A stretch of 64,000 nucleotides of DNA from Diadema antillarum (taxonomy: Eukaryota): contig NW_027271210.1 of the NCBI RefSeq assembly GCF_040938485.1, positions 992,001-1,056,000 of the forward strand. The letters are read 5' to 3'. The position numbers and the translations under genes were made by a program. The notes beneath the pieces were generated by a model. The model made no database searches, was not told where the DNA came from, and saw only the letters and a list, made by a program, of their open reading frames with translations. Shown in pieces: positions 6,104 through 51,264 of the stretch; the stretch's first letter is position 1, and every line of letters begins with the position of its first letter.

Positions 6104-6139
<36 letters not shown>

Positions 6140-6142
<3 letters not shown>

Positions 6143-7241
6143 AGCGAAATCGATCAATTCCGCTGTATGGCCTGTATATAAGCTGTGTATTGATTTTTCA
6201 CTATCGATTATATGAAGGTGTAATCGATCATTGTTGGTAGTAACGTTGGTATAGGCAAGGTCCAAAAATCACGGTTTTGGCCACATTTATGATTATTACA
6301 TAAGATAAGGGCATTAGGGGGGTAAGATGATTGAAGATTCAGAGAGAGGTAATGGATACCAGTAATTTGAGACCAAATTTGTGGGGTTTTGGTTAGAATC
6401 ATTCGCCAAGATTGGTGTTCTAGTGGTGGAAATATTGATTAACTACGCTAACAATTATTTAGTAAAAATACAATTGGGTAATTCAGATTCTGTTTCGATG
6501 TCGAGTTGGGACGGATAAGGTAGGCACGTCTAGTACGTGTTGAGTTGGATCGAGCTGTCAAAGCTCGAGATAGCTGTGTACAAACAGTCTAGTGAAGGCG
6601 ATGATCAGGGTAGTCTACTCCTGATTGCTAGCCAAGTCTAGATATGTGAATGAAACGTACATAGCTAGCTGTCGAGTTGAGACGAGTAAGGCCGGGACGG
6701 GACTTGGAAATTGCGGGACCGGGTCTGCATTCTGAACTGTGTACAATTACTGCGGAAACGAGTTGGACTGTGTTTGTACAGAAGTATTCCCGAATTAAAG
6801 ACTACCTGTTGAACGTTATACCAAGAAGTGACTGGAAGAGTAATCTTTCCTACCAAAGATTCCTGAGCGAGTGCAGGTGAGTCGAGTGGACCTTGATGGT
6901 GACTGGTGGTAAAGAGATTGGTAGATGTAACATAATAGATAAAGTGCGAAGCTGGTATGTTGGACTGTTGATGAAGGACTGGTAGATAACTGGTAGAAAT
7001 AAATTGGTAGCAAGAATTAACTGGTATCTTGGGCCGTATATTGCGGCCAAACGAACTTACGCCTAGCTCGGCCATCCTGATCGAAGTTCGTCGTAGGGCC
7101 CCATTTTCGATACCAATCAATCTATCATCACACATCTATCACCAAACACAAGTTATTCGCTACACCAGAGGGATCTACCCCTTTCTACGATGCGGTGTCA
7201 GGACTGAGGGATATGCCCATATGCGACCGGATTTCGCCACA
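6140..7241 (+). repeat. 5' LTR (1102 bp)
   Basis: Begins TGTAGCGAAATC and ends GATTTCGCCACA (11/12 terminal inverted repeat). Manual alignment to 14881-15982 shows 3 transitions (6626, 6637, 6942). AATAAA at 6998-7003. Confidence 0.97.
6874..6882 (+). promoter_or_regulatory. Consensus 5' splice donor CAG|GTGAGT within the LTR
   Basis: Perfect match to the U1 consensus; intron would start at 6877 (copy at 15618 in the 3' LTR). Use is not demonstrated. Confidence 0.5.
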
Positions 7242-7243
7242 CG

Positions 7244-7261
7244 TGGTGTCAGGAGTGGGAT
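7244..7261 (+). promoter_or_regulatory. Primer binding site, tRNA-Leu (CAG-type)
   Basis: TGGTGTCAGGAGTGGGAT starts after a 2-nt spacer downstream of the LTR and is complementary to the eukaryotic tRNA-Leu 3' end ATCCCACTCCTGACACCA. Confidence 0.9.
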
Positions 7262-7302
7262 TTAAAAGAACCAGCGCTACCAGTGGGAGTTAGGAATCAG
7301 CC

Positions 7303-10300
7303 ATGGCAAAGCAGCTGTCACCGGCGCAGCTATGGAGGAAGCTGCAATCGGAGATGGTAGAAGTGGAGCGGATGATGGACGAACTTCGAGCTGAGATGGG
7401 GATGAGGCGGCCACCACCACCAGTATCAGGAAGTACTGGTAGAGTGAAGCCAGCAGACGGGACCAGCGGCAGGGGTGGTATTTTACAACCACAATATGAC
7501 GTTCCGGGTGCTAAAACCAGCACCAACAGCAGTGGGAGGACGACTGGTGCTACAGCAGGGAGCTGGGCCGACAGTAGCAGGGCAGATGTAACGTTGGAAG
7601 ACGATTACTACCCACCTCCAGCTGACAAAAGGGCGGAGATGAGGCAATGGCAGACTGCATCAAATTCAACCAGAGAGACAACGACAACCAACCCGGTACA
7701 AGAGAGAGAAGTCCCGATAAGAATCAGCACCCCATGGCGCCGCTCTGAATTGTGGGACGAAGGGCAATTCAAGCATCACGAGAGGGGACGTGATGTAATA
7801 ATAAAGATGACACCAGACCGGTACGACGGCAAGGGGCCTATTCTAGATTACCTAACCCACTTCGAGGCATGTGCTGGGGTAAACAGGTGGTCAGAAGAGG
7901 AGGCTCTGCAGTACCTGGCGGCCAGCATGAGAGGTCCTGCAGTTAAGGTACTGGTGCAGCAAACGGGGAGGAAATTAACCTACCAAGAGCTGGTGGGGCG
8001 ACTTAAACACCGATTTGGTCCGGCAGGGAAAGCAGAGATGTTTCTGGCGGAATTACGAACGAGGCGACGAAGACCCAAAGAGTCACTTCAAGAGCTGGGT
8101 CAGAGCATTCGGGAGCTGACGGCTCTAGCCTACCAAGAGTTTGATGAGGCGGGGCAGGACCGCTTAGCTAGGGGACACTTCATGGACGCTGTCGTGAGGC
8201 CGGAAATAAGAGAGGGGATGTTCCGTGCGCAGCCTCGCACGCTAGATGAGGCGATAGAGGCTGCACTAAGCACGGAGGCATTCTTAAAGATGGAGGCGGA
8301 AAGGTGTGACGGAAGGGGACCACGCTACAGCAGGGTGTTAACAAACACCGGTGGGAAACAGAAGGAGGGGACCACCAAGGAGGCTGAGGGTGTAGTCAGC
8401 AAAATGACAAAGGCCGTAGAAAGTCTAATTGCACGGTCTGAGTCTGCCAACCAGAAAGCAGCCAACACGGGAAAGATACCTGCTCTTCCAACAGGAATCT
8501 ACCAGAATGAGAGGTGCTTCAATTGTGGCCAAATGGGGCACTGGAGGAAGGATTGCCCCTTTCCACAAAGACGGCCAGTCTCCAATGCACCCGTCATGGA
8601 TGCAAGAAGATGCTACAACTGTAACCAGGTGGGCCATGGGTGGAGATATTGTCCGTATGGGCAAACGGAGAGACCACCACCAGTGAGCAGCAACCAAGGG
8701 GGAGAACCAGTATCTGCGCAGGGTAATACTGGTCCAGCTCTCCAACCACAACCTGCTGGAAGGGAGCAGGCACGACCATTGGGTACCGCAGATGGTAGAC
8801 GACTGGGCCTCTTCATCAATTCCAAAATCAACGGGCAGCCAATTACCTTCTTGATCGACACAGGCTCCTCCCAGTCAATCGTGTCTACCACCATTTATGA
8901 CACGATTGCAGAGGCACGGAAGCCGTCGCTGCAGAGTGTGGACAGCATAGTACATCAGGCGGACGGTACTCCACTGGGGACCAGGGGTAAAACCATGGCC
9001 GAGATCCAGCTTGGAGAGCTACTGTTCGTGCTGGAAGTAGTGGTAGCTAATGTCAACAGTGAAGGAATTTTGGGGTTGGACTTCCTGATGCAGACGAATT
9101 CAGTGTTGGACTGTCAGAAGATGGAGCTCCGGACGCCATGGGCCATCATTCCATGCCGAGACTACCAGGGCCAACCATTCTGTCATAGAATAGTTGCCAG
9201 TGAAACCACGGCTGTTCCAGCGGGTCATGAGGCCATAATAAAGGGAGAGGTAGCAGACAGACGGCGACAGGCGACTGGGGTTGGTCTGCTAGAAGCACCG
9301 ACAACTTCCACCGAGCTACTACATAAGGGACTACTGGTAGCACGAGCAGTAATCGAAGCAGACGCTGAGATACTACCAGTACGAGTCTTCAACCCAACGA
9401 AGGAAGAGAGAGTAGTAAAGAAAGGGACGACAGTTGCCTGCTTGACTGGAGTACGTGATACTGAAGATGTGGAGGCGATTCGAGACGGTGGGGTACAAGC
9501 TAGTGATGGGGTGCCATCACATTTGACGGAGCTGCTACATCGTAGTATCCAAGAGGTTCCGCAGCAATACCACTCATTGGTGGCCGAATTGCTGTGCGAA
9601 TTTACTGATGTCTTCTCCAAAGGACCAACGGATCTGGGCAGAACTGATTTGGTGCAACACACGATTTCTACCGGTGACGCTAGGCCAGTGAGACAAACAC
9701 AAAGGCGGCACCCAATGGAGCAACGACAGGAAATTGATAAGCAGATAAACGAGTTCCTCTCCCAGGGTTTGATCGAACGGGTCAGTAGCCCTTGGGCATC
9801 CAATGTGGTTCTCGTACGGAAGAAGGATGGTAGTAAGCGCTTTTGTGTGGACTACAGGCAGCTGAACGCTGTCACACTGAAGGACGCATACCCTCTACCA
9901 AGAATCGATGAAACATTAGATGCACTGAGTGGGGCTCAGTGGTTCTCTACACTCGACTTAGCAAGCGGGTATTGGCAGGTGGAGCTGGACGAACAAGCAA
10001 AGAAGAAGTCAGCATTCATTGCCAATGGTGGTCTGTATGCATGGCGGGTCATGCCCTTTGGCCTATGCAATGCACCGGCCACGTTCGAGAGGCTAATGGA
10101 TCGAGTGATGGCGGGCCTGACGTGGGAGACGCTACTGGTGTATTTGGACGTTGTCATCGTTTTTGGTAAGACGGTGGAGGAGGAGCTTGGTCGACTGAAA
10201 ACTGTGTTCCAGCGATTGCGTGGGGCTGGTCTGAAACTGAAACCTGCTAAGTGCCAACTGTTCCACACTACTGTGGAATACCTGGGGCACATCGTCTCAT

Positions 10301-12578
10301 CTACTGGGGTAACCACGGAGCCAGAGAAGGTCGCGGCCATCCAAAATTGGCCGAAACCAAACAGCGTCAAAGAGGTGCGGAGCTTCATAGGACTGGTCTC
10401 CTACTACCGGAAGTTTGTGGAAGGATTTGCTTCGATCGCTAAACCACTCCACCAACTCACCAGAAAGAACCAGAGGTTTCTCTGGACAGAGGAATGCCAG
10501 GAGGCTTTCGACAAATTGAAGCAACGACTGGTGTCACCTCCAATTCTGGCGTATCCCTGCCCAGAAGGGGACTACATTTTGGACACAGATGCCAGCCAGC
10601 ATGGAATCGGAGCCGTGCTGTCGCAAGTACAGGGAGGAACTGAGAGAGTTATTGCGTACGGAAGCCGCACGCTACGTAAGGAAGAAGTCAACTACTGTGT
10701 CACCAGGAAGGAATTACTGGCAGTGGTAGCCTTCCTCAACCAGTTCCGACAGTATCTCTATGGAAGGCATGTGATCATCCGCACTGACCATGGATCATTG
10801 CAGTGGTTGGTTTGATTCAAGGACCCCAGAGGGCAGCTGGCACGATGGTTGGAGCTGGTATCGGAGTACGATTTCGAGATACAGCACCGGCAGGGGAGGA
10901 GCCATGGAAATGCTGATGGTCTATCTCGGAGACCATGTAGGCAGTGTGGCCGGGACCAAGAAACCCCACCCGGGCAAGTCAGAGCACTGACAGAGGAGGC
11001 GTTGGGAGCCCCGAGTATTCGGAGTCTTCAGGAGAAGGATGAGGACATACAAGTGGTGAGAGCTGCGAAGATTCGAGGGGTGAAGCCAGCCAATGAAGTG
11101 GTGTCATCTTGGCCGGAAAAAGCAACTCGATTGTTGGAGCACTGGGACGCATTGGAGGTGGTAGATGGCGTGCTGGTCCGCAGATGGGAGTCAGCGGATG
11201 GTACCAACACCCGGAGACAGACCATCCTACCAAGGGAGCTCATAAAGAATGCGATACATGAGGTCCATTCTGCTCTTACTGGGGGACATTTGGTATCCAG
11301 AAGACACTGGGACGATTGAAGTTGCGGTACTACTGGGTCGGCATGGCAGCTGATGTTCGTTCGACCCTCAGACAGTGTGACGTGTGTGCCAGAAGGAAGT
11401 GTCCTGGTAAAGCTGCTCGAGCACCACTACAACAAAGGATTAGTGGGTTCCCGTTGGAGAGAGTGGCATTGGACATCATGGGCCCTTTCCCCCGGACCAA
11501 GCATGGGAACAAGTACATCCTGGTGATTGGCGACCACTTCACAAAATGGATGGAGGCCTACCCAATACCAGATGAAAGGGCGGAGACCGTGGCAGAGAGA
11601 CTGGTGGTGGAGTACATCTGTCGATTTGGGGTACCAAGATTCGTACATTCGGATCAAGGCCGAAATTTCATCTCTGAAGTCTTCAGTGAAGTCTGCAAGC
11701 TGATGGGGGTGAAAAAGACCAGGACCACAGCCTACAACCCAAAGTCAGACGGGTTCGTAGAAAGGTACAACCGCACCCTAATAGACACAGTTGCTGCACT
11801 ACTGGACGTGGAGAGGCAGGAAAAGGATTGGGATCAACTTCTCCCTTTCGCCACCTGTGCCTACCGCAGCTGTGCTCAGGACTCGACTGGGGAAACTCCC
11901 AACATGCTAATGTTGGGGCGAGAGGTGGTATTGCCCGGTGACATCGTCACACCAGATGATGTTGACAGCCAGCAGGACCTCCAGACCGATTATGCGGAGG
12001 AGCTACGGGCTCGAATGCAGAGGGCCCACAACCGAGCCAGGGTGAAACAGATGTCGGCCTGTAGAAAGCAGAAACGATTCTACGACCAGAAGGCCCATGG
12101 ATCTGCCTTCAACCAGGGCCAGTATGCGTGGCTACGGCGGAAGATGAGGGTGAAAGGACAGAGTCCAAAACTTCAGACCAAATGGCTGGGACCGTACCTG
12201 ATAGTCACCAAAATATCGGATGTGACTGTTCGACTCCAGTTGACACCTCGCTCCAAGCCATTGGTTGTCCACGTAGATCGGTTGAAGCTGTACACAGGGG
12301 TACCGAGACCAGTTTGGGAGTTCGAACCAAACACGGCGGTGGTACAAGCTAGAGACCAGCAGCAAGCCACTGCTGCCGACGTGGAGCTGGACGAGTCAGG
12401 GCTGGAAGAAGCTGGTGCTACTCACCCCTCTAGCTATGAAGAGAGAGAAGTGGATTCTCAACCGCCAGTTAGGAACCGGAAGTCTCCGACTGTGCCAACG
12501 GCATGCGACGATGATGACTGGAATGGAGGAAGGCGTTATCCGAAGAGGGATAGGCGTCGGCCGCAGTATTATAATTAG
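7303..12578 (+). pseudogene. gag-pol: Gypsy gag-pol polyprotein, disrupted (segments 7303-10815, 10816-11292 in the same frame, then frame of 11316-12578)
   Basis: Gag CA (PDRYDG...HFEACA), two CCHC knuckles (8515-8556, 8611-8652), protease LIDTGS (D at 8857), RT (LPRID, PFGLCNAPATF, YLDV at 10141-10152), RNase H (ILDTDAS), integrase HHCC + D11472/D11652/E11760 + GPY. In-frame TGA at 10813-10815. A 1-nt deletion at ~11292; restoring it gives GGHLGIQKTLGRLKLRYYW. Confidence 0.95.
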
Positions 12579-12693
12579 GCACTAAGTAACGAATCTAAAT
12601 AATCGAGTGATACTCGAATGTATTCGATGAGCTAAATAATAAGGATTAAAGACTGTGGTATTATTAATGTGCAGGTGCAGTGCAGGCAACGAC

Positions 12694-14097
12694 ATGGCAT
12701 CTTCCAAAAAGGGGGATTTGTACAGTCCCTTCAACGATTATTTCGGGCTGAGTAAGCTGGTATCAACGGGGAGGAAGAAGAGGGAGACCGTGGACCAAGA
12801 GACGGGCAACCAGTTCTTTGATTTTGAACAGGTGCGAGGCTCGTTCAATAGCTACCTGGGGTTAGACGAAGGGGAAGCGACAGTGACGAAGAAGAGTGGA
12901 TCCCAGGACCTAGGGACGAGATACCAGTATCCGGCCTTACGGAGGGACGGCGATGCAGCTGCGTGTCTGTCAACTGGTAGCCGTTGGCTGAGCAACGAGG
13001 GGATTCTACCAGACATCACCACTCTAAGAGGACGAGATGGAAGTGATGGACCACTCAGCAGATCAGTGTCTTGGTGCGTTTTCTGCAAAAACAATGGTGA
13101 AAGTTTGCAGGTCTACGGAAGCCACGCGCTGAAGTCCATAGACGGGAAAACTACCTGTCCTGTACTTCGGGCATACAGGTGCCCGATTTGTCGCGCCACC
13201 GGGGACGAGGCTCACACCATTAAGTACTGTCCATTATCAAGAAAGAAAAAGCTGCCTGGGTCAGCAGAGCCAGGATCTACCAGTAACATCAGCACAGCGG
13301 CGCTGTATTTTAAAACCCCACGGAATGCTGCCGGACGGCTGAGGAGCTGTAATACCAGAACGATGTCCACCCCCGGAAAACCCAAGTCCTGTTCAGACAG
13401 GGGAGAAGTCTACCGTTGTAAGGTGTGCCGGCGGTCCTTTTCCAGTAAAAGCTCGATGCAACGACACGAATTCGACGTGCACACCCCCAAATTTAGGTGT
13501 GATCGCTGTGCTTTCCAGACGCTGCACAAGCGAGAATTAGAACGCCACTACGGGACTCACGCCACCGATGTAGCTCCAGGGCGGGTACATTTGAAAACCC
13601 CAGTTTATGCGCCAATTAGGAGTAAGAAGCCGCCGTCAACGGAAACCAGACCCAGGAGTAGATCCCCCCTGTGCCCCTCTACTCCAACCCCTTCCCGGTG
13701 CACGCCTGAGAGGTGCACCCCAGAGAGGAGTGTCAGCCCAGTGAGGAGCGTCACATCTGAAAGAAGCAGTACCCCGGTGCTGGATGAGGACAGCTGTGGT
13801 AGCGGGCTCCTCGACCTGACTGGCGGAAGGCGGCGATTAGTAATCGAGGACGTGGTACCTGAAGTCAAATCCCCGGTAACATGTGGAATCGGGGTCCAGG
13901 TGTCACCATCCGACATTGACGGGGGGATTATCCGAGGGAGGCTAGGAGAATTACGACGCAGAGGGAAGACCAGTTTCAGCGCTACCGAGACGCTGGTGTT
14001 GCGGCCTGGCCGAACGTGGACCAGGAAGACGGAGCGGTTCCTGACGACTGGTGGCGAGTTTTTGGAGGTAGTGACCGAAACCGTGGAGGAAAAGTAG
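12694..14097 (+). CDS. nanos: Retrotransposon-borne Nanos-like protein fused to 2 C2H2 zinc fingers and an S/T-P-rich tail (467 aa from ATG 12694; alternative ATG 12667)
   Basis: NIM-like YSPFNDYFGLSKLV (12721-12762); Nanos finger C-X2-C-X12-H-X10-C-X7-C-X2-C-X7-H-X4-C (13075-13230); C-terminal LYFKTPRNAAGR; C2H2 pair 13411-13560; no introns or stops. Confidence 0.92.
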   Translation: MASSKKGDLYSPFNDYFGLSKLVSTGRKKRETVDQETGNQFFDFEQVRGSFNSYLGLDEGEATVTKKSGSQDLGTRYQYPALRRDGDAAACLSTGSRWLSNEGILPDITTLRGRDGSDGPLSRSVSWCVFCKNNGESLQVYGSHALKSIDGKTTCPVLRAYRCPICRATGDEAHTIKYCPLSRKKKLPGSAEPGSTSNISTAALYFKTPRNAAGRLRSCNTRTMSTPGKPKSCSDRGEVYRCKVCRRSFSSKSSMQRHEFDVHTPKFRCDRCAFQTLHKRELERHYGTHATDVAPGRVHLKTPVYAPIRSKKPPSTETRPRSRSPLCPSTPTPSRCTPERCTPERSVSPVRSVTSERSSTPVLDEDSCGSGLLDLTGGRRRLVIEDVVPEVKSPVTCGIGVQVSPSDIDGGIIRGRLGELRRRGKTSFSATETLVLRPGRTWTRKTERFLTTGGEFLEVVTETVEEK

Positions 14098-14845
14098 TGG
14101 AAGCGAAATTTTGGTAGAAGTGCGTGGGCAGATATGGACGTTAAACATAATTTGCCCAAATTGAGTTTGGACAATAAGTTATAATTGGACGTTTCTGAGG
14201 ACTGTTCGCGAAGATAGTGAAAGTGGTAGCGGATACCGGAAGGAAGATGTGGAAGCGATTATTGGTAGAGAAGGGCAGATACGGACGCTAAATTTAATCT
14301 GTCTAATTTTAAATTGGACATTAAGTTGTTAAAAGTGAACATTCCCAAGGACTGATGGACATTACTAATGTAATTGTTCTGGAAGAACGATGGTATTAAG
14401 TTGGATTCAATGAAGCTTATGTACGGAGATGTAGTGATTCCACGGAGTAGTGGAGGGACGTCATTGAAGCGATACCAGGTGTTGGTAGAATTGGTTTGAA
14501 GAGTTGGTAGAACCATATTGGTATCCACATTACAATTGGTAGATATGGTAATGACTGGTCTTGGAGTCTTAGCTTTCTTCTTCTCAAATTTTGAGTTGGT
14601 TGTGTCCATGTTGGAAGAAAGGGGGTATTAGACAAGGTTGGAGAGGTGGCGTTAAAAATGTACATAATGTTAATGGTTTTAAAGGAATGATGAGTGTTAT
14701 TAGAAATCATAAGGTGATGTTTTAAAAGGATTTGGTGGTGGACACCAGTATAAGTATTTTGGTAGTTGATACCAGTCGGAATGTGATGGAGGTCGGTTTG
14801 TGTTTAAAGTGTTGACGTTTAAAGTGTTTAAGATTGAAGTGGTAT

Positions 14846-14880
14846 AAGCTCGGGGACCGAGCTTGGTGGGTCGGGGGTCG
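14846..14880 (+). promoter_or_regulatory. Hairpin (AAGCTCGG-GGA-CCGAGCTT) plus G-rich polypurine-tract equivalent abutting the 3' LTR
   Basis: Position immediately 5' of TG at 14881. GGTGGGTCGGGGGTCG is G-rich but not pure purine. Confidence 0.65.
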
Positions 14881-15979
14881 TGTAGCGAAATCGATCAATT
14901 CCGCTGTATGGCCTGTATATAAGCTGTGTATTGATTTTTCACTATCGATTATATGAAGGTGTAATCGATCATTGTTGGTAGTAACGTTGGTATAGGCAAG
15001 GTCCAAAAATCACGGTTTTGGCCACATTTATGATTATTACATAAGATAAGGGCATTAGGGGGGTAAGATGATTGAAGATTCAGAGAGAGGTAATGGATAC
15101 CAGTAATTTGAGACCAAATTTGTGGGGTTTTGGTTAGAATCATTCGCCAAGATTGGTGTTCTAGTGGTGGAAATATTGATTAACTACGCTAACAATTATT
15201 TAGTAAAAATACAATTGGGTAATTCAGATTCTGTTTCGATGTCGAGTTGGGACGGATAAGGTAGGCACGTCTAGTACGTGTTGAGTTGGATCGAGCTGTC
15301 AAAGCTCGAGATAGCTGTGTACAAACAGTCTAGTGAAGGCGATGATCAGGGTAGTCTACTCCTGATCGCTAGCCAAGCCTAGATATGTGAATGAAACGTA
15401 CATAGCTAGCTGTCGAGTTGAGACGAGTAAGGCCGGGACGGGACTTGGAAATTGCGGGACCGGGTCTGCATTCTGAACTGTGTACAATTACTGCGGAAAC
15501 GAGTTGGACTGTGTTTGTACAGAAGTATTCCCGAATTAAAGACTACCTGTTGAACGTTATACCAAGAAGTGACTGGAAGAGTAATCTTTCCTACCAAAGA
15601 TTCCTGAGCGAGTGCAGGTGAGTCGAGTGGACCTTGATGGTGACTGGTGGTAAAGAGATTGGTAGATGTAACATAATAGATAGAGTGCGAAGCTGGTATG
15701 TTGGACTGTTGATGAAGGACTGGTAGATAACTGGTAGAAATAAATTGGTAGCAAGAATTAACTGGTATCTTGGGCCGTATATTGCGGCCAAACGAACTTA
15801 CGCCTAGCTCGGCCATCCTGATCGAAGTTCGTCGTAGGGCCCCATTTTCGATACCAATCAATCTATCATCACACATCTATCACCAAACACAAGTTATTCG
15901 CTACACCAGAGGGATCTACCCCTTTCTACGATGCGGTGTCAGGACTGAGGGATATGCCCATATGCGACCGGATTTCGCC

Positions 15980-15982
<3 letters not shown>
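14881..15982 (+). repeat. 3' LTR (1102 bp)
   Basis: 1099/1102 identical to the 5' LTR by manual comparison; AATAAA at 15739-15744. Confidence 0.97.
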
Positions 15983-16016
<34 letters not shown>

Positions 16017-16019
<3 letters not shown>

Positions 16020-26808: not shown

Positions 26809-27251
26809 ACACGTTCACTGCACCTATATACGTAACTAGTACACAAAGACACCTACACACAGCAGAGAGGAATGAAAGAGAGAGGGGGAGTGTCCACCGA
26901 CAGTCGAAAAACACATTAAACATGTTGACTAGAAATACTTTGCGACACCAGCTGCTGAAAAAGTAAGGAAAAGAAAAACCAACGACAGTGAATTTGAAAA
27001 GAGACCACAATTGAACAGTTCGATAACCACGGCAAGCATAAAATATGAAGAAATATTTACATATATTCAGATTATGACATGTCAACCATAGTAAGATATG
27101 TATGTTCAACTGCTATTTTTTGAGCAGGATCAGCTTTCAGAATTGACAACTCTTGTTTGACACACAACATCATTAGTCGTGTTCGTATAATGTTTAATTA
27201 TCATTGTTGCTGCTATGTTTTTTTTTCTTCTATGTTCTAGGATTAATCACC

Positions 27252-29102
27252 ATGGCAACGAGTCATCAGATCAGCAGCCAGAATCTGGAGTGTCCTGTCT
27301 GTCTGACACTCTTCAACCAACCCAAATCATTGACGTGTTCTCATACCTTCTGCAAAGACTGCCTAGAACGCATCTTTCTCACTCAGACAAACCAACATAC
27401 TATATCATGCCCTGTATGCAGGACAGAGACTTCTGTACCGAATGGAGAGGTGGCTAAGTTACAAACAATTGTGGCGCTGGGTTCTCTTGTGGACGAAGTG
27501 AAGACCAACAATCCCACATGCACAGTTTGTGAGCTGGACGCAAAGCCCCCAGCTGTGTCCTACTGTCAGACATGCATGGAAAACATGTGTTTATCCTGTG
27601 AGAAAGACCATTCTGTCTGGAAAAGGTTCTCCAACCACGCAGTGGTGGCCGTGAGCGAAGTGGTCTCTGGGAAAGTTCCACTTAAGAGGCGACGAAAGTG
27701 TAAGGAACACCCTAACGAGGATAAAGACTGTTTCTGCACCGGATGTCGGGAGTACGTCTGCTTCAAATGCGGGATGTTGGAGCACACGCAGGAGGGACAT
27801 GGGATGGTAAAGGCACAAAAACATGAGAAAATGACACTGGAAAATATCAAGGAACTACAGAGAAGAACAAACTCAAAGAAAACAATCGTTGAAGAACACA
27901 TCGACTTCATAGAGAAACAACGCAAGGAGATATCAAACATGATGACAAAGCTCAACGATGACATAGACAAGACGTACGAGGAATGCATGCAACGTTTGTC
28001 AGAGAGAAAAGAGACACTTAAATGTGAAGTGAGGCAATTGTCTGAAATGTTTGAGAAGGAATTGCACGTCATGGCGGAAAGGAGTCATCGAACTCTCAAT
28101 CGAATGAACGCTGCGGAGGAGCTGGTAGCTAACGGTATAAAGGTACCGTTAGAGAAAGACGCCTTGATTACACACGAAACAGTTTGCGAGAACTTCAAGA
28201 ACATTTTGGAACGAAATTATCTTAACGACCAATTACCAATATATGTGAAAGAACGAGCTCAGAAGATTTCATTCCATAAACAGGAGATGGTCAATGATCC
28301 TTGTCTTGGAGAGCTTAAAGGTTATAAGTGGGATGTCAAAACATGCGTAGAGTTACCTAAGTGCTGCTATGGTGTGCACTGTATCAGCCGTGCACCAGAC
28401 AATAAGATGGCAGTGGCACGTCATGATGGAATCCTTCTCTACTCCCATGATGGTGAGTTACAAGACTGGGTACTACAGAATCATTGTATTTATGCAATTG
28501 CATTCCTGTCTGACGGTCGAAGTGTCGTACAAGATCTTAACGAGATTTCACTGTACACTCGACAGTGGGAGAAACTCGATATTGGATTTAAGTCAAGTCA
28601 CGACCTACATAAATATCACTGTCGTCTTTTCACTGATCTAAATGATGATATCTACGTGAACATTCGGAATTCGAAAATCATCGAGGTATTTACCCCACAG
28701 GGTGGTAAGGTAGTCAGAGAAATCATGTCTGATGGATATTCATTTCCGCGATTATTCTCCTTTCAATCCGCTGAAAACATGATACTGACAGATAGAGATA
28801 CCGTCGTGTGCATTGATAGTAAAGGGACAAAGGAAATTATCTTGCAGAAAAAGGACATGTTTGCATCCCAAGCTGTTTGTCGAGATGACTCAGTCATTGT
28901 AGTCTGGGTGAATAAAGATGAGAGTCTTATTAGTATCGATCGATACACGAGTGACCTCCAGCACCTTCAGAATCTCGTCAGTGATTTCAAAATGCGTGAA
29001 TTATGGTACTGGGCCTACTACTACTACGGCCTACAAGAGTTTGAGAGTGGCGAGATAGCATTCTGTACGAATAATGAACTCTGCATATTTCATACAACAT
29101 AA
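27252..29102 (+). CDS. TRIM E3 ligase (RING-Bbox1-Bbox2-coiled coil-NHL-like propeller), paralog 1, 616 aa, single coding exon
   Basis: C3HC4 RING CPVC...CSHTFCKDC...CPVC; B-box1 CTVC...CQTC...CLSC...H; B-box2 CKEH...CTGC...CFKC...H; helical region; beta-rich C-terminus. Pyrimidine tract + AG acceptor at 27240, 11 nt before the ATG. Confidence 0.92.
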   Translation: MATSHQISSQNLECPVCLTLFNQPKSLTCSHTFCKDCLERIFLTQTNQHTISCPVCRTETSVPNGEVAKLQTIVALGSLVDEVKTNNPTCTVCELDAKPPAVSYCQTCMENMCLSCEKDHSVWKRFSNHAVVAVSEVVSGKVPLKRRRKCKEHPNEDKDCFCTGCREYVCFKCGMLEHTQEGHGMVKAQKHEKMTLENIKELQRRTNSKKTIVEEHIDFIEKQRKEISNMMTKLNDDIDKTYEECMQRLSERKETLKCEVRQLSEMFEKELHVMAERSHRTLNRMNAAEELVANGIKVPLEKDALITHETVCENFKNILERNYLNDQLPIYVKERAQKISFHKQEMVNDPCLGELKGYKWDVKTCVELPKCCYGVHCISRAPDNKMAVARHDGILLYSHDGELQDWVLQNHCIYAIAFLSDGRSVVQDLNEISLYTRQWEKLDIGFKSSHDLHKYHCRLFTDLNDDIYVNIRNSKIIEVFTPQGGKVVREIMSDGYSFPRLFSFQSAENMILTDRDTVVCIDSKGTKEIILQKKDMFASQAVCRDDSVIVVWVNKDESLISIDRYTSDLQHLQNLVSDFKMRELWYWAYYYYGLQEFESGEIAFCTNNELCIFHTT

Positions 29103-49416: not shown

Positions 49417-51264
49417 ATGGCAACAATTCATCAAATCAGCATGCAGAATCTGGGGTGTCCTGTCTGTCTGACACTTTTCAACCAACCGAAAACGCTATTT
49501 TGCAGTCACACATTCTGCAAAGACTGCTTGGAACGTATCTTTCAAACTCAAACCAACAAACATGCTATAACATGTCCTGTGTGCAGGCAAGGAACTTCAG
49601 TTTATAACGGAGATGTGGGTCACTTACTTCCAAGCGTAGTCCTAAATTCTCTCGTGGACGAAGTGGAAACCATCAGGAATTCAACACCAACATGCACACT
49701 TTGTACAGGCACAGACAAAAAAATGCCAGCTGTGTCCTATTGTCAGGACTGTGGGGATAGTATGTGTACATCCTGTGAAAAAACACATCTAATCTGGACA
49801 CCGTTCTCCAACCATGCAGTTGTGGATATGAAGGAGGTTGTCTCTGGGAAGGTTCCGCTTAAAAGACGACGGAAGTGTAACGAGCACCCTAACAGCGATG
49901 AACAATGTTTCTGTACCGGATGTCGAGAGTACGTGTGTTGCATATGTGGAATGTTGAAGCACTCACAGAAGGGACATGGAATGGTTAAGGCATCAAAACA
50001 CGAGAAAAAATTATTGGAAAATGTTAAAGAATTACAGAAAAGAGCAAGCTCAAAGAAAATAATCCTTGAAGAACACATTGAGTTCATAGAAACACAACAC
50101 AAGGAAATATCAGATATGATGAGAAAGCTCAATGATGACATAGACAAGGCGTACGAGGAAAACATACAACTATTGTCAGCCAGAAGAGAGGCGCTCAAAT
50201 GGGAAGTGCGGCAACTTTCTGAAGAATTCAAGAAAGAATTGAATATCATGAAGGAAAGGAGTCGTCTAAGAATCACTCAAATTAACGCTGCGGAAGAGCT
50301 GGTAGCTGACGGTGTGAAGTTGCCGTTGGAGAAAGATGCATTGATTACACACCACACACTGTGCGAGAACCTGGAGACCCTTCTTGGACAAAATTATCCT
50401 AACGACCAATTACCGAGATATGTGAAAGAACGAGCTCAGAAGATTTCATTCCATAGACAGGTGACGGTCAATGATCCTTGTCTTGGAGAGCTTAAAGGTC
50501 ATACTTGGGATGTCAAGACGCGCGTAGAGCTACCTGTCGACGAGGATGCAATGACTTGTATCACTCGTGCACCAGACAATAAGATTGCTGTGTCCTGGAA
50601 TCGTGGAATCCTTCTCTACTCCCATGATGGCGAGTTACAGGACAGGCTTCTGCAAGATCACTATATTACTGCGATTGCTTTCCTGTCTGATGGTCGAAGT
50701 GTCATAAATGATGACGATAACATTTTTCTCTACACTCGACAGTGGGAGAAACTCGATATCGAATTTGAATCAGGTAACTTTCTAGGTGTACATTTTGGTA
50801 ATCTCTCTACTGATGCAAGCGATAACATCTACGTGGGTTTTGAGTGGTCGAAAGTCATAGAGGTATTTACCCCACATGGTGGTAAATCAGTCAGGAAAAT
50901 AATGTGTCATGGATATTCACCGTGGCAATTATTCTCCTTTAAATCCACGGAAAACATGATACTGACGGACAGAGAAACCGTCGTGTGCATTGATAGTGAA
51001 GGGAGAAAGGTCCATACCATGCAAAAAGAGAACAAATTGGCATTCCCAGCTGTTTGTCGAGATGATTCGGTCATTGTAGCCTGGGTAGATGAAGAGGAGA
51101 GTCTTATCAGTATCGATCGATACACGAGTGATCTCGAGCACCTTCATAATCTCATCAGTGATTTCAGAACAAGTGAGTCAGACTACTACGGTCTGCAAGA
51201 GTTTGAGAGTGGCGAGATAGCATTCTGTCTGGATGATGAACTCTTCATATTCCATACAACCTAA
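49417..51264 (+). CDS. TRIM E3 ligase (RING-Bbox1-Bbox2-coiled coil-NHL-like propeller), paralog 2, 615 aa, single coding exon
   Basis: Same architecture and colinear with paralog 1; acceptor TACAG| at 49405, 11 nt before the ATG. Confidence 0.92.
   Translation: MATIHQISMQNLGCPVCLTLFNQPKTLFCSHTFCKDCLERIFQTQTNKHAITCPVCRQGTSVYNGDVGHLLPSVVLNSLVDEVETIRNSTPTCTLCTGTDKKMPAVSYCQDCGDSMCTSCEKTHLIWTPFSNHAVVDMKEVVSGKVPLKRRRKCNEHPNSDEQCFCTGCREYVCCICGMLKHSQKGHGMVKASKHEKKLLENVKELQKRASSKKIILEEHIEFIETQHKEISDMMRKLNDDIDKAYEENIQLLSARREALKWEVRQLSEEFKKELNIMKERSRLRITQINAAEELVADGVKLPLEKDALITHHTLCENLETLLGQNYPNDQLPRYVKERAQKISFHRQVTVNDPCLGELKGHTWDVKTRVELPVDEDAMTCITRAPDNKIAVSWNRGILLYSHDGELQDRLLQDHYITAIAFLSDGRSVINDDDNIFLYTRQWEKLDIEFESGNFLGVHFGNLSTDASDNIYVGFEWSKVIEVFTPHGGKSVRKIMCHGYSPWQLFSFKSTENMILTDRETVVCIDSEGRKVHTMQKENKLAFPAVCRDDSVIVAWVDEEESLISIDRYTSDLEHLHNLISDFRTSESDYYGLQEFESGEIAFCLDDELFIFHTT

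What the first reader, a model, noticed from the sequence alone, without database searches (positions are those of the whole stretch)
6140..15982. Young Gypsy retrotransposon carrying an intact Nanos gene in the env position
Seen: between the integrase stop (12578) and the PPT/3' LTR lies an uninterrupted, intronless 1.4-kb ORF. It contains a Nanos zinc finger with exact C-X2-C-X12-H-X10-C-X7-C-X2-C-X7-H-X4-C spacing (WCVFCKNNGE...HTIKYCP). Both LTRs enclose it, so it travels with the element. Established: Nanos is the conserved germline and stem-cell translational repressor that acts with Pumilio and CCR4-NOT. Inference: the element captured a nanos mRNA and keeps it as an accessory gene. It could use it to repress host mRNAs (e.g. 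defence factors), to bias or protect germline cells that carry it, or to control its own RNA. I know of no described LTR-retrotransposon family with Nanos cargo, but could not search.
Basis: partly seen in the sequence, partly recalled or inferred. Interest (0 to 1): 0.96.

Follow-up and report, generated by a model that had tools for sequence, protein, structure and literature searches.

The report
Sea-urchin Gypsy retrotransposon carrying Nanos
A young LTR retrotransposon in a Diadema sea-urchin genome carries a complete copy of the germ-cell regulator Nanos. The same cargo sits at the same place in sister copies from two Diadema species, and its RNA-binding zinc finger is kept under selection, so it is a stable accessory gene of the family and not a one-off accident.

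Summary
Window 6140-15982 is a Ty3/Gypsy element with 1102-bp LTRs (3 mismatches), inserted in an (AT)n microsatellite. A 467-codon ORF lies between integrase and the 3' LTR. Its zinc finger matches Pfam zf-nanos (E 4.7e-24) with exact CCHC-CCHC spacing.

- **Host.** It is a Diadema sea urchin, closest to D. antillarum.
- **Family trait.** All six sister loci fetched from D. setosum and D. antillarum hold nanos at the same place in the same element family. Two D. setosum copies have an uninterrupted 1757-aa gag-pol and 99.8-100% identical LTRs.
- **The 1.4-kb ORF is copy-specific.** In every sister, nanos is a separate 222-aa ORF followed by a 243-aa C2H2 zinc-finger ORF. Nanos-free relatives also have that C2H2 ORF. 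One deletion fuses the two in the window copy.
- **This copy is defective.** Its gag-pol has one stop and one frameshift.
- **Origin.** The cargo groups with echinoid Nanos2-type genes (about 41-47% identity to the Diadema host nanos). It keeps the N-terminal CNOT1-binding-like motif and an echinoid C-terminal tail motif.
- **Selection.** dN/dS is 0.42 overall and 0.04 in the zinc finger.

RefSeq annotates at least 14 such ORFs as host nanos-like genes. I found no description of this in the literature. What the cargo does for the element is inferred, not shown.

The parts
6106..6139 (.). (AT)17 microsatellite, 5' half of the target site
   Evidence: The same kind of flank is seen at the sister copies.
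6140..7241 (+). 5' LTR, 1102 bp, with TG...CA ends
   Evidence: (3 mismatches to the 3' LTR).
7244..7261 (+). Putative primer-binding site, starting TGG, 2 nt after the LTR
   Evidence: read from the sequence. The tRNA partner was not identified.
7303..12578 (+). Gag-pol gene, broken in this copy by 1 in-frame stop and 1 frameshift
   Evidence: counts against the intact 1757-aa gag-pol of L009, 94% amino-acid identity.
8512..8559 (+). Gag zinc knuckle (zf-CCHC)
8818..9090 (+). Aspartic protease domain
9814..10296 (+). Reverse transcriptase (RVT_1)
10483..10809 (+). RNase H domain
11457..11741 (+). Integrase catalytic core (rve)
12129..12293 (+). Integrase C-terminal SH3 domain (Tf2-type / Integrase_p58_C)
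12694..14097 (+). ORF3 of this copy (467 aa; an alternative ATG lies at 12667). It is a nanos ORF and a C2H2 ORF joined in frame by one deletion relative to all six sister copies.
12721..12771 (+). N-terminal CNOT1-interacting-motif-like stretch of 17 aa, shared with echinoid and cnidarian Nanos
   Evidence: The motif definition comes from PMC4003280.
13075..13230 (+). Nanos tandem CCHC zinc finger
   Evidence: dN/dS is 0.04.
13417..13560 (+). Two C2H2 zinc fingers of the second accessory protein
14002..14028 (+). Conserved C-terminal motif of the C2H2 accessory protein
14098..14864 (+). Non-coding tail between the accessory ORFs and the polypurine-like tract. It holds one Pumilio-response-element-like octamer.
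14865..14880 (+). G-rich tract abutting the 3' LTR (putative polypurine tract)
14881..15982 (+). 3' LTR
15983..16017 (.). (AT)17.5 microsatellite, 3' half of the target site

Best explanation
The window holds a recently inserted but now defective copy of a Ty3/Gypsy family that lives in Diadema sea urchins. Besides gag-pol, the family carries two accessory genes downstream of integrase.

- The first is a complete Nanos gene of 222 aa. It was taken from an echinoid Nanos2-type gene. The capture was either long ago or was followed by fast change.
- The second is an older C2H2 zinc-finger gene of 243 aa, which relatives without nanos also have.
- In this copy one deletion joined the two into a single 467-aa frame.

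Most likely mode of action (inferred, not shown): the element expresses its own Nanos in germline or early embryonic cells, free of the host gene's 3'-UTR controls. There it would act like host Nanos. The tandem CCHC finger would bind mRNAs, probably together with Pumilio, and the N-terminal motif would recruit CCR4-NOT to repress or degrade them. The gain to the element would be a cell state that favours its inheritance, or dampened host or own mRNAs.

My estimates for each step:
- Nanos is a family-level cargo: about 0.97.
- It is of echinoid Nanos origin: about 0.8.
- Its RNA-binding finger is maintained by selection: about 0.8.
- It works as a Nanos-like repressor to the element's benefit: about 0.4.
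For: **Same architecture in sisters.**
- All 6 sister loci from two species show the same layout.
- L009 and L016 have an uninterrupted gag-pol of 1757 aa, a 222-aa nanos ORF, a 243-aa C2H2 ORF, and LTR pairs 99.8-100% identical.
- At least 14 RefSeq gene models of this ORF exist in D. setosum and D. antillarum.

**Selection (window against L009).**
- gag-pol 0.12-0.19; C2H2 ORF 0.24; nanos 0.42 (p = 0.007).
- Nanos zinc finger 0.04 (6 synonymous, 1 non-synonymous).
- Over seven DNA copies the finger has 9 synonymous and 1 non-synonymous change.

**Origin.**
- The element clade has 100% bootstrap support and is sister to echinoid host Nanos2-type proteins at 68%.
- Those host proteins include the S. 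purpuratus Nanos 2 cluster.
- The alignment with host urchin nanos is collinear from the first motif to a shared C-terminal tail motif.

**Nanos features.**
- The zinc finger matches solved Nanos structures, including the Nanos-Pumilio-RNA complex 5KL1.
- In the N-terminal motif, positions 6, 7 and 10 of the published CNOT1-interacting motif are identical. Positions 1 and 4 are aromatic, as in the Diadema host nanos.

**Long residence.** The cargo has the element's purine-rich strand skew, unlike the host nanos.

**The C2H2 ORF is older.** A relative follows the integrase end in L010 without nanos (45-51% identity). A collinear C2H2 ORF follows integrase in L006 and L007.

**Background on urchin Nanos2.** It acts with Pumilio, is tightly restricted to germ cells, and is toxic when expressed elsewhere (bioRxiv 10.1101/2022.08.12.503758).
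Against: - **No expression data.** I have no RNA or protein evidence that the ORF is expressed, or in which cells.
- **Constraint is limited to the finger.** Outside it, dN/dS is 0.64 and not distinguishable from neutral.
- **Biased sample.** The sister copies were found through annotated intact nanos ORFs, so their intactness is not evidence. I could not run a census for copies of the family that lack nanos.
- **Motif not canonical.** The N-terminal motif departs from the published consensus at two of five near-invariant positions.
- **Weak node.** Bootstrap support for the echinoid origin is only 68%.
- **No enrichment of Pumilio sites.** Pumilio-response-element-like motifs in the element are not more frequent than chance.
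- **This copy.** It is defective, and its fused protein may not function.
Confidence: 0.6

Rival explanations
1. Passenger cargo. Nanos was picked up once and is simply copied along with the element. It does nothing for the element, and the apparent constraint comes from small counts and a biased sample.
For: - Non-finger dN/dS is 0.64 and not significant.
- All sister copies were found through intact annotated ORFs.
- No expression data are available.
Against: - The zinc finger shows 9 synonymous and 1 non-synonymous change over 36 synonymous and 129 non-synonymous sites.
- The ORF survived a subfamily split with dS of about 0.12-0.2.
- It is complete in both apparently intact copies.
- A useless 0.8-kb insert would be expected to be lost or to decay over that span.
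Confidence: 0.15
2. Antagonist or decoy. The element's Nanos competes with host Nanos for Pumilio, target mRNAs or CCR4-NOT and so loosens germline repression, rather than imitating it.
For: - The cargo differs from the Diadema host finger at about 12 of 55 positions, whereas host fingers of Diadema and Lytechinus differ at about 5.
- It has an extra stretch of about 35 aa with a degenerate second copy of the N-terminal motif.
Against: - All zinc ligands, the N-terminal motif and the C-terminal tail motif are retained. That fits a working Nanos at least as well as a decoy.
- Nothing here separates mimic from antagonist.
Confidence: 0.12
3. The cargo acts on the element's own RNA, for example by timing its translation or stability through the Pumilio-like site in the shared 3' tail, rather than on host mRNAs.
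For: One Pumilio-response-element-like octamer lies in the 3' tail of all four copies checked.
Against: The count in the element is no higher than chance. The LTR copy of the motif is not conserved between subfamilies.
Confidence: 0.1
4. Host-level benefit. The element merely spread nanos copies around the genome, and some copies now serve the host as extra nanos genes, so selection acts for the host.
For: RefSeq models them as nanos homolog 1-like or 3-like genes.
Against: - Every copy examined is still inside the element with LTRs.
- The best-preserved copies are the youngest ones, with LTRs 99.8-100% identical.
- Constraint is seen between element subfamilies, not at fixed orthologous loci.
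Confidence: 0.05
5. A one-off retrogene insertion into this single copy, or an assembly chimera.
For: None was found.
Against: The same position and the same flanking element sequence occur in six other loci from two independent assemblies, at 92-98% nucleotide identity across nanos and its neighbours.
Confidence: 0.01

Closest known systems
Echinoid Nanos2 (for example S. purpuratus Nanos 2, NP_001073023.1, as named; Diadema setosum XP_072163528.1)
   Same: It is the closest protein clade outside the element. The alignment is collinear. Shared features are the N-terminal motif, the SWCVFCKNNGES start of the finger, all eight zinc ligands, and a C-terminal TPR...GR.R tail. Both are intronless.
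   Different: - Overall identity is only about 41-47% and finger identity about 78%.
- The cargo has an extra stretch of about 35 aa in the linker.
- It sits inside an LTR element, is multi-copy, and has no nucleotide-level similarity to the host locus.
- Its base skew is that of the element.
Acutely transforming retroviruses that transduced a host gene (from my own knowledge)
   Same: A host coding sequence is carried between the LTRs of a reverse-transcribing element and is copied with it.
   Different: In those viruses the captured gene usually replaces viral genes, and the virus needs a helper. Here two copies keep a complete gag-pol beside the cargo, and the cargo has persisted through a subfamily split and in two host species.
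Errantiviruses: insect Gypsy elements with a third ORF (env) taken from a baculovirus (bioRxiv 10.1101/2023.08.03.551782, abstract seen)
   Same: A Ty3/Gypsy backbone with an acquired ORF after integrase that became a stable lineage trait linked to germline transmission.
   Different: The acquired gene here is a cytoplasmic RNA regulator of host origin, not a viral envelope protein. There are two accessory ORFs, and neither matches an envelope family in Pfam.
Plant LTR retrotransposons with extra ORFs of unknown role (for example rice Retrosat2 ORF0, PMC3485330, abstract seen)
   Same: Extra ORFs are kept within an LTR retrotransposon family.
   Different: Those ORFs mostly have no recognisable host homologue. 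Here the cargo is a full, recognisable developmental regulator.

Membership tests
Nanos (Pfam zf-nanos, PF05741) | Tandem CCHC-CCHC zinc finger with the canonical spacing | tested here: met
   A regular expression matches at ORF3 residues 128-179. All eight ligands are invariant or nearly so in 17 aligned proteins; one copy has lost one His.
Nanos (Pfam zf-nanos, PF05741) | Score above the curated family threshold | tested here: met
   84.8 bits against a cutoff of 27, covering profile positions 1-53 of 54.
Nanos (Pfam zf-nanos, PF05741) | Sequence likeness to solved Nanos fingers | tested here: met
   3ALR at E 1.1e-18; 5KL1 and 5KL8 at E 2.5e-16.
Nanos (Pfam zf-nanos, PF05741) | N-terminal CNOT1-interacting motif (near-invariant F1, W4, D6, Y7, L10 according to PMC4003280) | tested here: inconclusive
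   D6, Y7 and L10 are present. Positions 1 and 4 are Y and F, the same as in the Diadema host nanos. No solved chain matched the 30-aa N-terminus.
Nanos (Pfam zf-nanos, PF05741) | Binds RNA with Pumilio and represses translation | not testable with these tools
   This needs expression and binding data.
Ty3/Gypsy LTR retrotransposon | Two LTRs with TG...CA ends, a primer-binding site and a polypurine-like tract | tested here: met
Ty3/Gypsy LTR retrotransposon | Domain order gag (zinc knuckle), protease, RT, RNase H, integrase | tested here: met
   for the window; for the intact 1757-aa sister protein.
Ty3/Gypsy LTR retrotransposon | Target-site duplication | tested here: inconclusive
   Both flanks are (AT)n, so a short duplication cannot be read.
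Ty3/Gypsy LTR retrotransposon | Uninterrupted gag-pol (autonomous copy) | tested here: not met
   The window copy has 1 stop and 1 frameshift. The feature is met by sisters L009 and L016.
Env-bearing Gypsy (errantivirus-like) | The third ORF encodes an envelope glycoprotein | tested here: not met
   Pfam finds only zf-nanos and C2H2 fingers in ORF3 and in its sister ORFs.
Host-gene transduction of the retroviral oncogene type | The captured gene replaces element genes, leaving a helper-dependent element | tested here: not met
   L009 and L016 keep a full gag-pol beside the cargo.

The most novel reading that the evidence does not exclude
A currently active LTR retrotransposon family of Diadema sea urchins has taken over a germline determinant. 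It expresses its own Nanos, free of the host's mRNA and protein controls, to push or hold cells in a germline-like, translationally quiet state, or to silence host mRNAs, and so raises its own inheritance. A second accessory C2H2 protein may help aim integration at (AT)n microsatellites.
Probability: 0.3. Interest if true: 0.93.

Novelty: new variant of a known kind. Interest (0 to 1): 0.82.

Why it matters
Mobile elements must be passed on through the germline, yet known animal retrotransposons reach it by timing, by cell-to-cell transfer or with an envelope gene. I know of none that carries a germ-cell fate regulator. A family that keeps a working-looking Nanos would be a natural case of a genomic parasite holding a lever on germline translation.

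It would give a direct way to ask how Nanos dosage and control matter in an animal where Nanos2 is tightly restricted and toxic elsewhere.

It also has a practical side. At least 14 RefSeq 'nanos-like' genes in two Diadema genomes are element cargo, which would mislead gene-family and germline studies.

Tried and rejected
- **Cnidarian host.** The first protein search pointed to coral and anemone Nanos as best hits, so I took the host for a cnidarian. The exhaustive search and the domain-only search corrected this to Diadema.
- **Exact look-ups.** Look-ups of the fused ORF3 and of a TRIM-like ORF found nothing. The window's own assembly is not in the collection in that form.
- **Shared upstream module.** I tested whether the stretches upstream of the two accessory ORFs are a duplicated splice-acceptor module. 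The similarity was not above shuffles (36 of 500 shuffles reached the observed score), so I dropped the idea.
- **Pumilio-response-element enrichment.** The element has 3 matches (2 unique) against roughly 1 expected, which is not convincing.
- **Structure model.** The AlphaFold model of the nanos half had mean pLDDT 32.7 and was useless, so I ran no fold search.
- **Metagenome scan.** The scan with the C2H2 alignment gave only weak finger matches.
- **tRNA partner.** tRNA scans did not identify the primer tRNA.
- **Other scans.** Rfam found nothing in the window. The bacterial promoter and terminator scan of the LTR was uninformative.
- **Wasted literature search.** One search was lost to word-start matching of 'nanos'.
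- **Clade assignment.** I suspected from memory that the family belongs to the Mag/SURL clade of Gypsy. No tool here holds those references, so I could not test it.


Full report
**1. What is at the coordinates.**
- Two 1102-bp direct repeats lie at 6140-7241 and 14881-15982. They differ at 3 positions, begin with TG and end with CA.
- A TGG-initiated primer-binding site follows the 5' LTR, and a G-rich tract precedes the 3' LTR.
- The element (53% G+C) sits in 35-37% G+C host DNA. It splits an (AT)n microsatellite, with (AT)17 on each side. The window has no N.
- Region 7303-12578 encodes a gag zinc knuckle, aspartic protease, reverse transcriptase, RNase H and an integrase with a Tf2-type SH3 / Integrase_p58_C end. 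This is a Ty3/Gypsy layout with no envelope gene.
- Against the uninterrupted 1757-aa gag-pol of a sister copy, the window's gag-pol has one in-frame stop and one frameshift. The insertion is young (LTRs 99.7% identical), but this copy is not autonomous.

**2. The ORF after integrase.** An open frame runs from 12655 to 14097, with ATG codons at 12667 and 12694.
- It matches Pfam zf-nanos over 53 of 54 profile positions (84.8 bits against a cutoff of 27, E 4.7e-24).
- The finger matches the solved Nanos fingers 3ALR and 5KL1/5KL8. The latter two are Nanos in complex with Pumilio and RNA.
- Downstream in the same frame lie two C2H2 fingers, an Arg/Ser/Pro-rich stretch and a conserved C-terminal motif.

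**3. Host and sister copies.** The word-based search first suggested cnidarian Nanos as nearest kin, at 39% identity. The exhaustive search changed the picture.
- The N-terminal 222 residues are 89-97% identical to separate 222-aa proteins of the sea urchins Diadema setosum and D. antillarum.
- Residues 231-466 have their own homologue, a 267-aa protein that lacks a Nanos part.
- At least 14 RefSeq gene models of the 222-aa type exist: 8 in D. setosum on several chromosomes and 6 in D. antillarum. They are named 'nanos homolog 1-like', 'nanos homolog 3-like' or 'uncharacterized protein'.
- I fetched six of these loci: L009, L012 and L016 from D. setosum, and L011, L014 and L015 from D. antillarum.
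- In all six, nanos lies within the same element family. It follows the integrase end and is followed by the C2H2 ORF, the non-coding tail and an LTR. Nucleotide identity to the window is 92-98%.
- L009 and L016 have an uninterrupted gag-pol, a 222-aa nanos ORF, a 243-aa C2H2 ORF and LTR pairs 99.8-100% identical. The others are truncated or carry stops or frameshifts in gag-pol.
- The window is therefore from a Diadema genome. Its copy is closest to the D. antillarum copies, at 97-98%.
- This excludes a one-off insertion and an assembly chimera.

**4. The 1.4-kb ORF is a copy-specific fusion.** In all six sisters the nanos ORF ends after 222 codons. A spacer of 156-178 nt separates it from the C2H2 ORF. 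The window copy lacks that spacer through one deletion, which leaves both coding parts complete and in one frame.

The C2H2 ORF is the older accessory gene.
- A 45-51% identical ORF follows an integrase end in a metagenome contig (L010) that has no nanos.
- A collinear C2H2 ORF follows integrase in elements whose pol is about 52-62% identical (L006, L007).
- Nanos was therefore added between integrase and an existing accessory gene.

**5. Where the cargo came from.** The element's Nanos aligns end to end with host-type urchin Nanos.
- The host-type proteins are D. setosum XP_072163528.1 (P0373), its D. antillarum counterpart, two Lytechinus proteins, and the cluster holding S. purpuratus Nanos 2.
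- Shared features are the N-terminal motif, the residues that open the finger, all zinc ligands, and a C-terminal TPR...GR.R tail that cnidarian proteins do not show in the pairwise alignments.
- In a neighbour-joining tree of 31 Nanos proteins the element clade has 100% bootstrap support. It is sister to the echinoid host clade with 68% support.
- The D. setosum host gene (L013) has no gag-pol within 10 kb and no nucleotide similarity to the element.
- Identity to that host protein is only 41-47% overall and about 78% in the finger. Host fingers of Diadema and Lytechinus differ at about 5 of 55 positions.
- The cargo also has the element's purine-rich strand skew, unlike the host gene.
- Together this points to an old capture, or to fast change after capture, from an echinoid Nanos2-type gene.
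- The host gene is a single exon, so intronlessness says nothing about an RNA route of capture.

**6. Is it kept by selection?** Two element subfamilies exist, and both occur in D. setosum.

| Region (window against L009) | dN/dS | Note |
|---|---|---|
| gag-pol | 0.12-0.19 | |
| C2H2 ORF | 0.24 | |
| nanos, whole ORF | 0.42 | 18 synonymous, 26 non-synonymous; p = 0.007 against neutrality |
| nanos zinc finger | 0.04 | 6 synonymous, 1 non-synonymous |
| nanos outside the finger | 0.64 | not significant |

- Over seven DNA copies the finger has 9 synonymous and 1 non-synonymous change.
- The N-terminal motif has no fixed replacement between subfamilies.
- According to PMC4003280, the CNOT1-interacting motif of Nanos occurs in echinoderms and has near-invariant F1, W4, D6, Y7 and L10. 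The cargo has Y1, F4, D6, Y7 and L10, exactly like the Diadema host protein.
- Caveat: the sister copies were found through intact annotated ORFs, so their intactness is not independent evidence. I could not run an unbiased census.

**7. How it most likely works.**
- Shown: a family-level, complete Nanos gene whose RNA-binding finger is under purifying selection, carried by an element family with apparently intact and very young copies.
- Inferred: the element expresses this Nanos separately from gag-pol. It lies in another frame behind stops, so a subgenomic or spliced RNA or internal initiation is needed, and none of these has been verified.
- Inferred: the protein then acts as Nanos does, binding mRNA with Pumilio and recruiting CCR4-NOT.
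- In urchins, Nanos2 with Pumilio represses targets such as CNOT6 and eEF1A in primordial germ cells. It is confined there by 3'-UTR and protein-level controls and is toxic when expressed elsewhere (bioRxiv 10.1101/2022.08.12.503758). A copy without the host 3' UTR would escape at least the mRNA-level control.
- These data cannot say whether the cargo mimics host Nanos, antagonises it, or regulates the element's own RNA.
- One Pumilio-response-element-like octamer (consensus from PMC4995099) is present in the 3' tail of all four copies checked. Its frequency is not above chance.

**8. Comparison with known systems and novelty.** The backbone is an ordinary Ty3/Gypsy element. Capture of foreign genes by reverse-transcribing elements is known, for example in transducing retroviruses, errantivirus env, and extra ORFs in plant elements. 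This case differs in three ways.
- The nature of the cargo: a conserved germline translational repressor of host origin.
- Its coexistence with a full gag-pol.
- Its persistence across subfamilies and two species.

No paper in the held library pairs zf-nanos with a retrotransposon, and other searches found nothing on point. The one Diadema setosum genome paper I checked does not mention nanos or Gypsy. Repbase, Dfam and GyDB could not be searched. I rate it a new variant of a known kind, of high interest.

**9. Slips and limits, declared.**
- The motif definition in this report comes from PMC4003280.
- Scripts printed BLAST segment bounds between copies. ORF listings gave ORF bounds. Together these show roughly where copies differ by indels or are interrupted, and my reasoning referred to some of them.
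- One search aligned the natural spacer of three sister copies as they stand. The consensus lines printed by the alignment tools were not used.
- No contig looked human.

Noticed in passing
window 6106-6139 and 15983-16017; L009, L011, L012, L014, L016 element flanks: Every copy whose ends could be read is flanked by an (AT)n microsatellite: the window, L009, L011 and L016 on both sides, and L012 and L014 on the 3' side. This suggests that integration is aimed at (AT)n tracts. Whether the C2H2 accessory protein plays a part is pure speculation.
   Followed up: partly
window 13384-14097; L009:10848-11579; L010:892-1695; L006:6222-7187: This Gypsy lineage has a second, older accessory gene after integrase. 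It has two N-terminal C2H2 fingers, an Arg/Ser-rich middle and a conserved C-terminal motif, and its function is unknown. It is under purifying selection (dN/dS 0.24). No structure could be obtained.
   Followed up: partly
RefSeq models of D. setosum and D. antillarum (P0212, P0361-P0367, P0370-P0372, P0441, P0442): At least 14 element-borne nanos ORFs are annotated as host genes ('nanos homolog 1-like', 'nanos homolog 3-like', 'uncharacterized protein'). This inflates the apparent nanos gene family of Diadema.
   Followed up: yes
window 12844-12864 (ORF3 residues 51-57): A degenerate second copy of the N-terminal motif (FNSYLGL) lies inside a stretch of about 35 aa that host urchin Nanos lacks. 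It is less conserved in the second subfamily.
   Followed up: no
window 27204-29102 (+) and 49417-51264 (+): Two long intronless ORFs (632 and 615 aa) have a RING finger plus B-box domains, so they are TRIM-like genes. Neither exact protein is in the public collection.
   Followed up: partly
window about 39462-43462 (-): A remnant of a non-LTR retrotransposon: reverse transcriptase and an endonuclease/exonuclease/phosphatase domain spread over several broken ORFs.
   Followed up: no
window 6665-7135 and 15406-15876 (-): A 156-aa antisense ORF lies inside each LTR. It has no Pfam match and is probably chance.
   Followed up: partly
L009:11683-12026: The D. setosum subfamily has a 172-bp tandem duplication in the non-coding tail. 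The tail and the LTRs diverge much faster between subfamilies (75-85% identity) than the coding parts (92%).
   Followed up: no
L012:12493-12567 (-): A tRNA-Thr(AGT) gene lies just beyond the 3' (AT)n flank of the truncated D. setosum copy.
   Followed up: no
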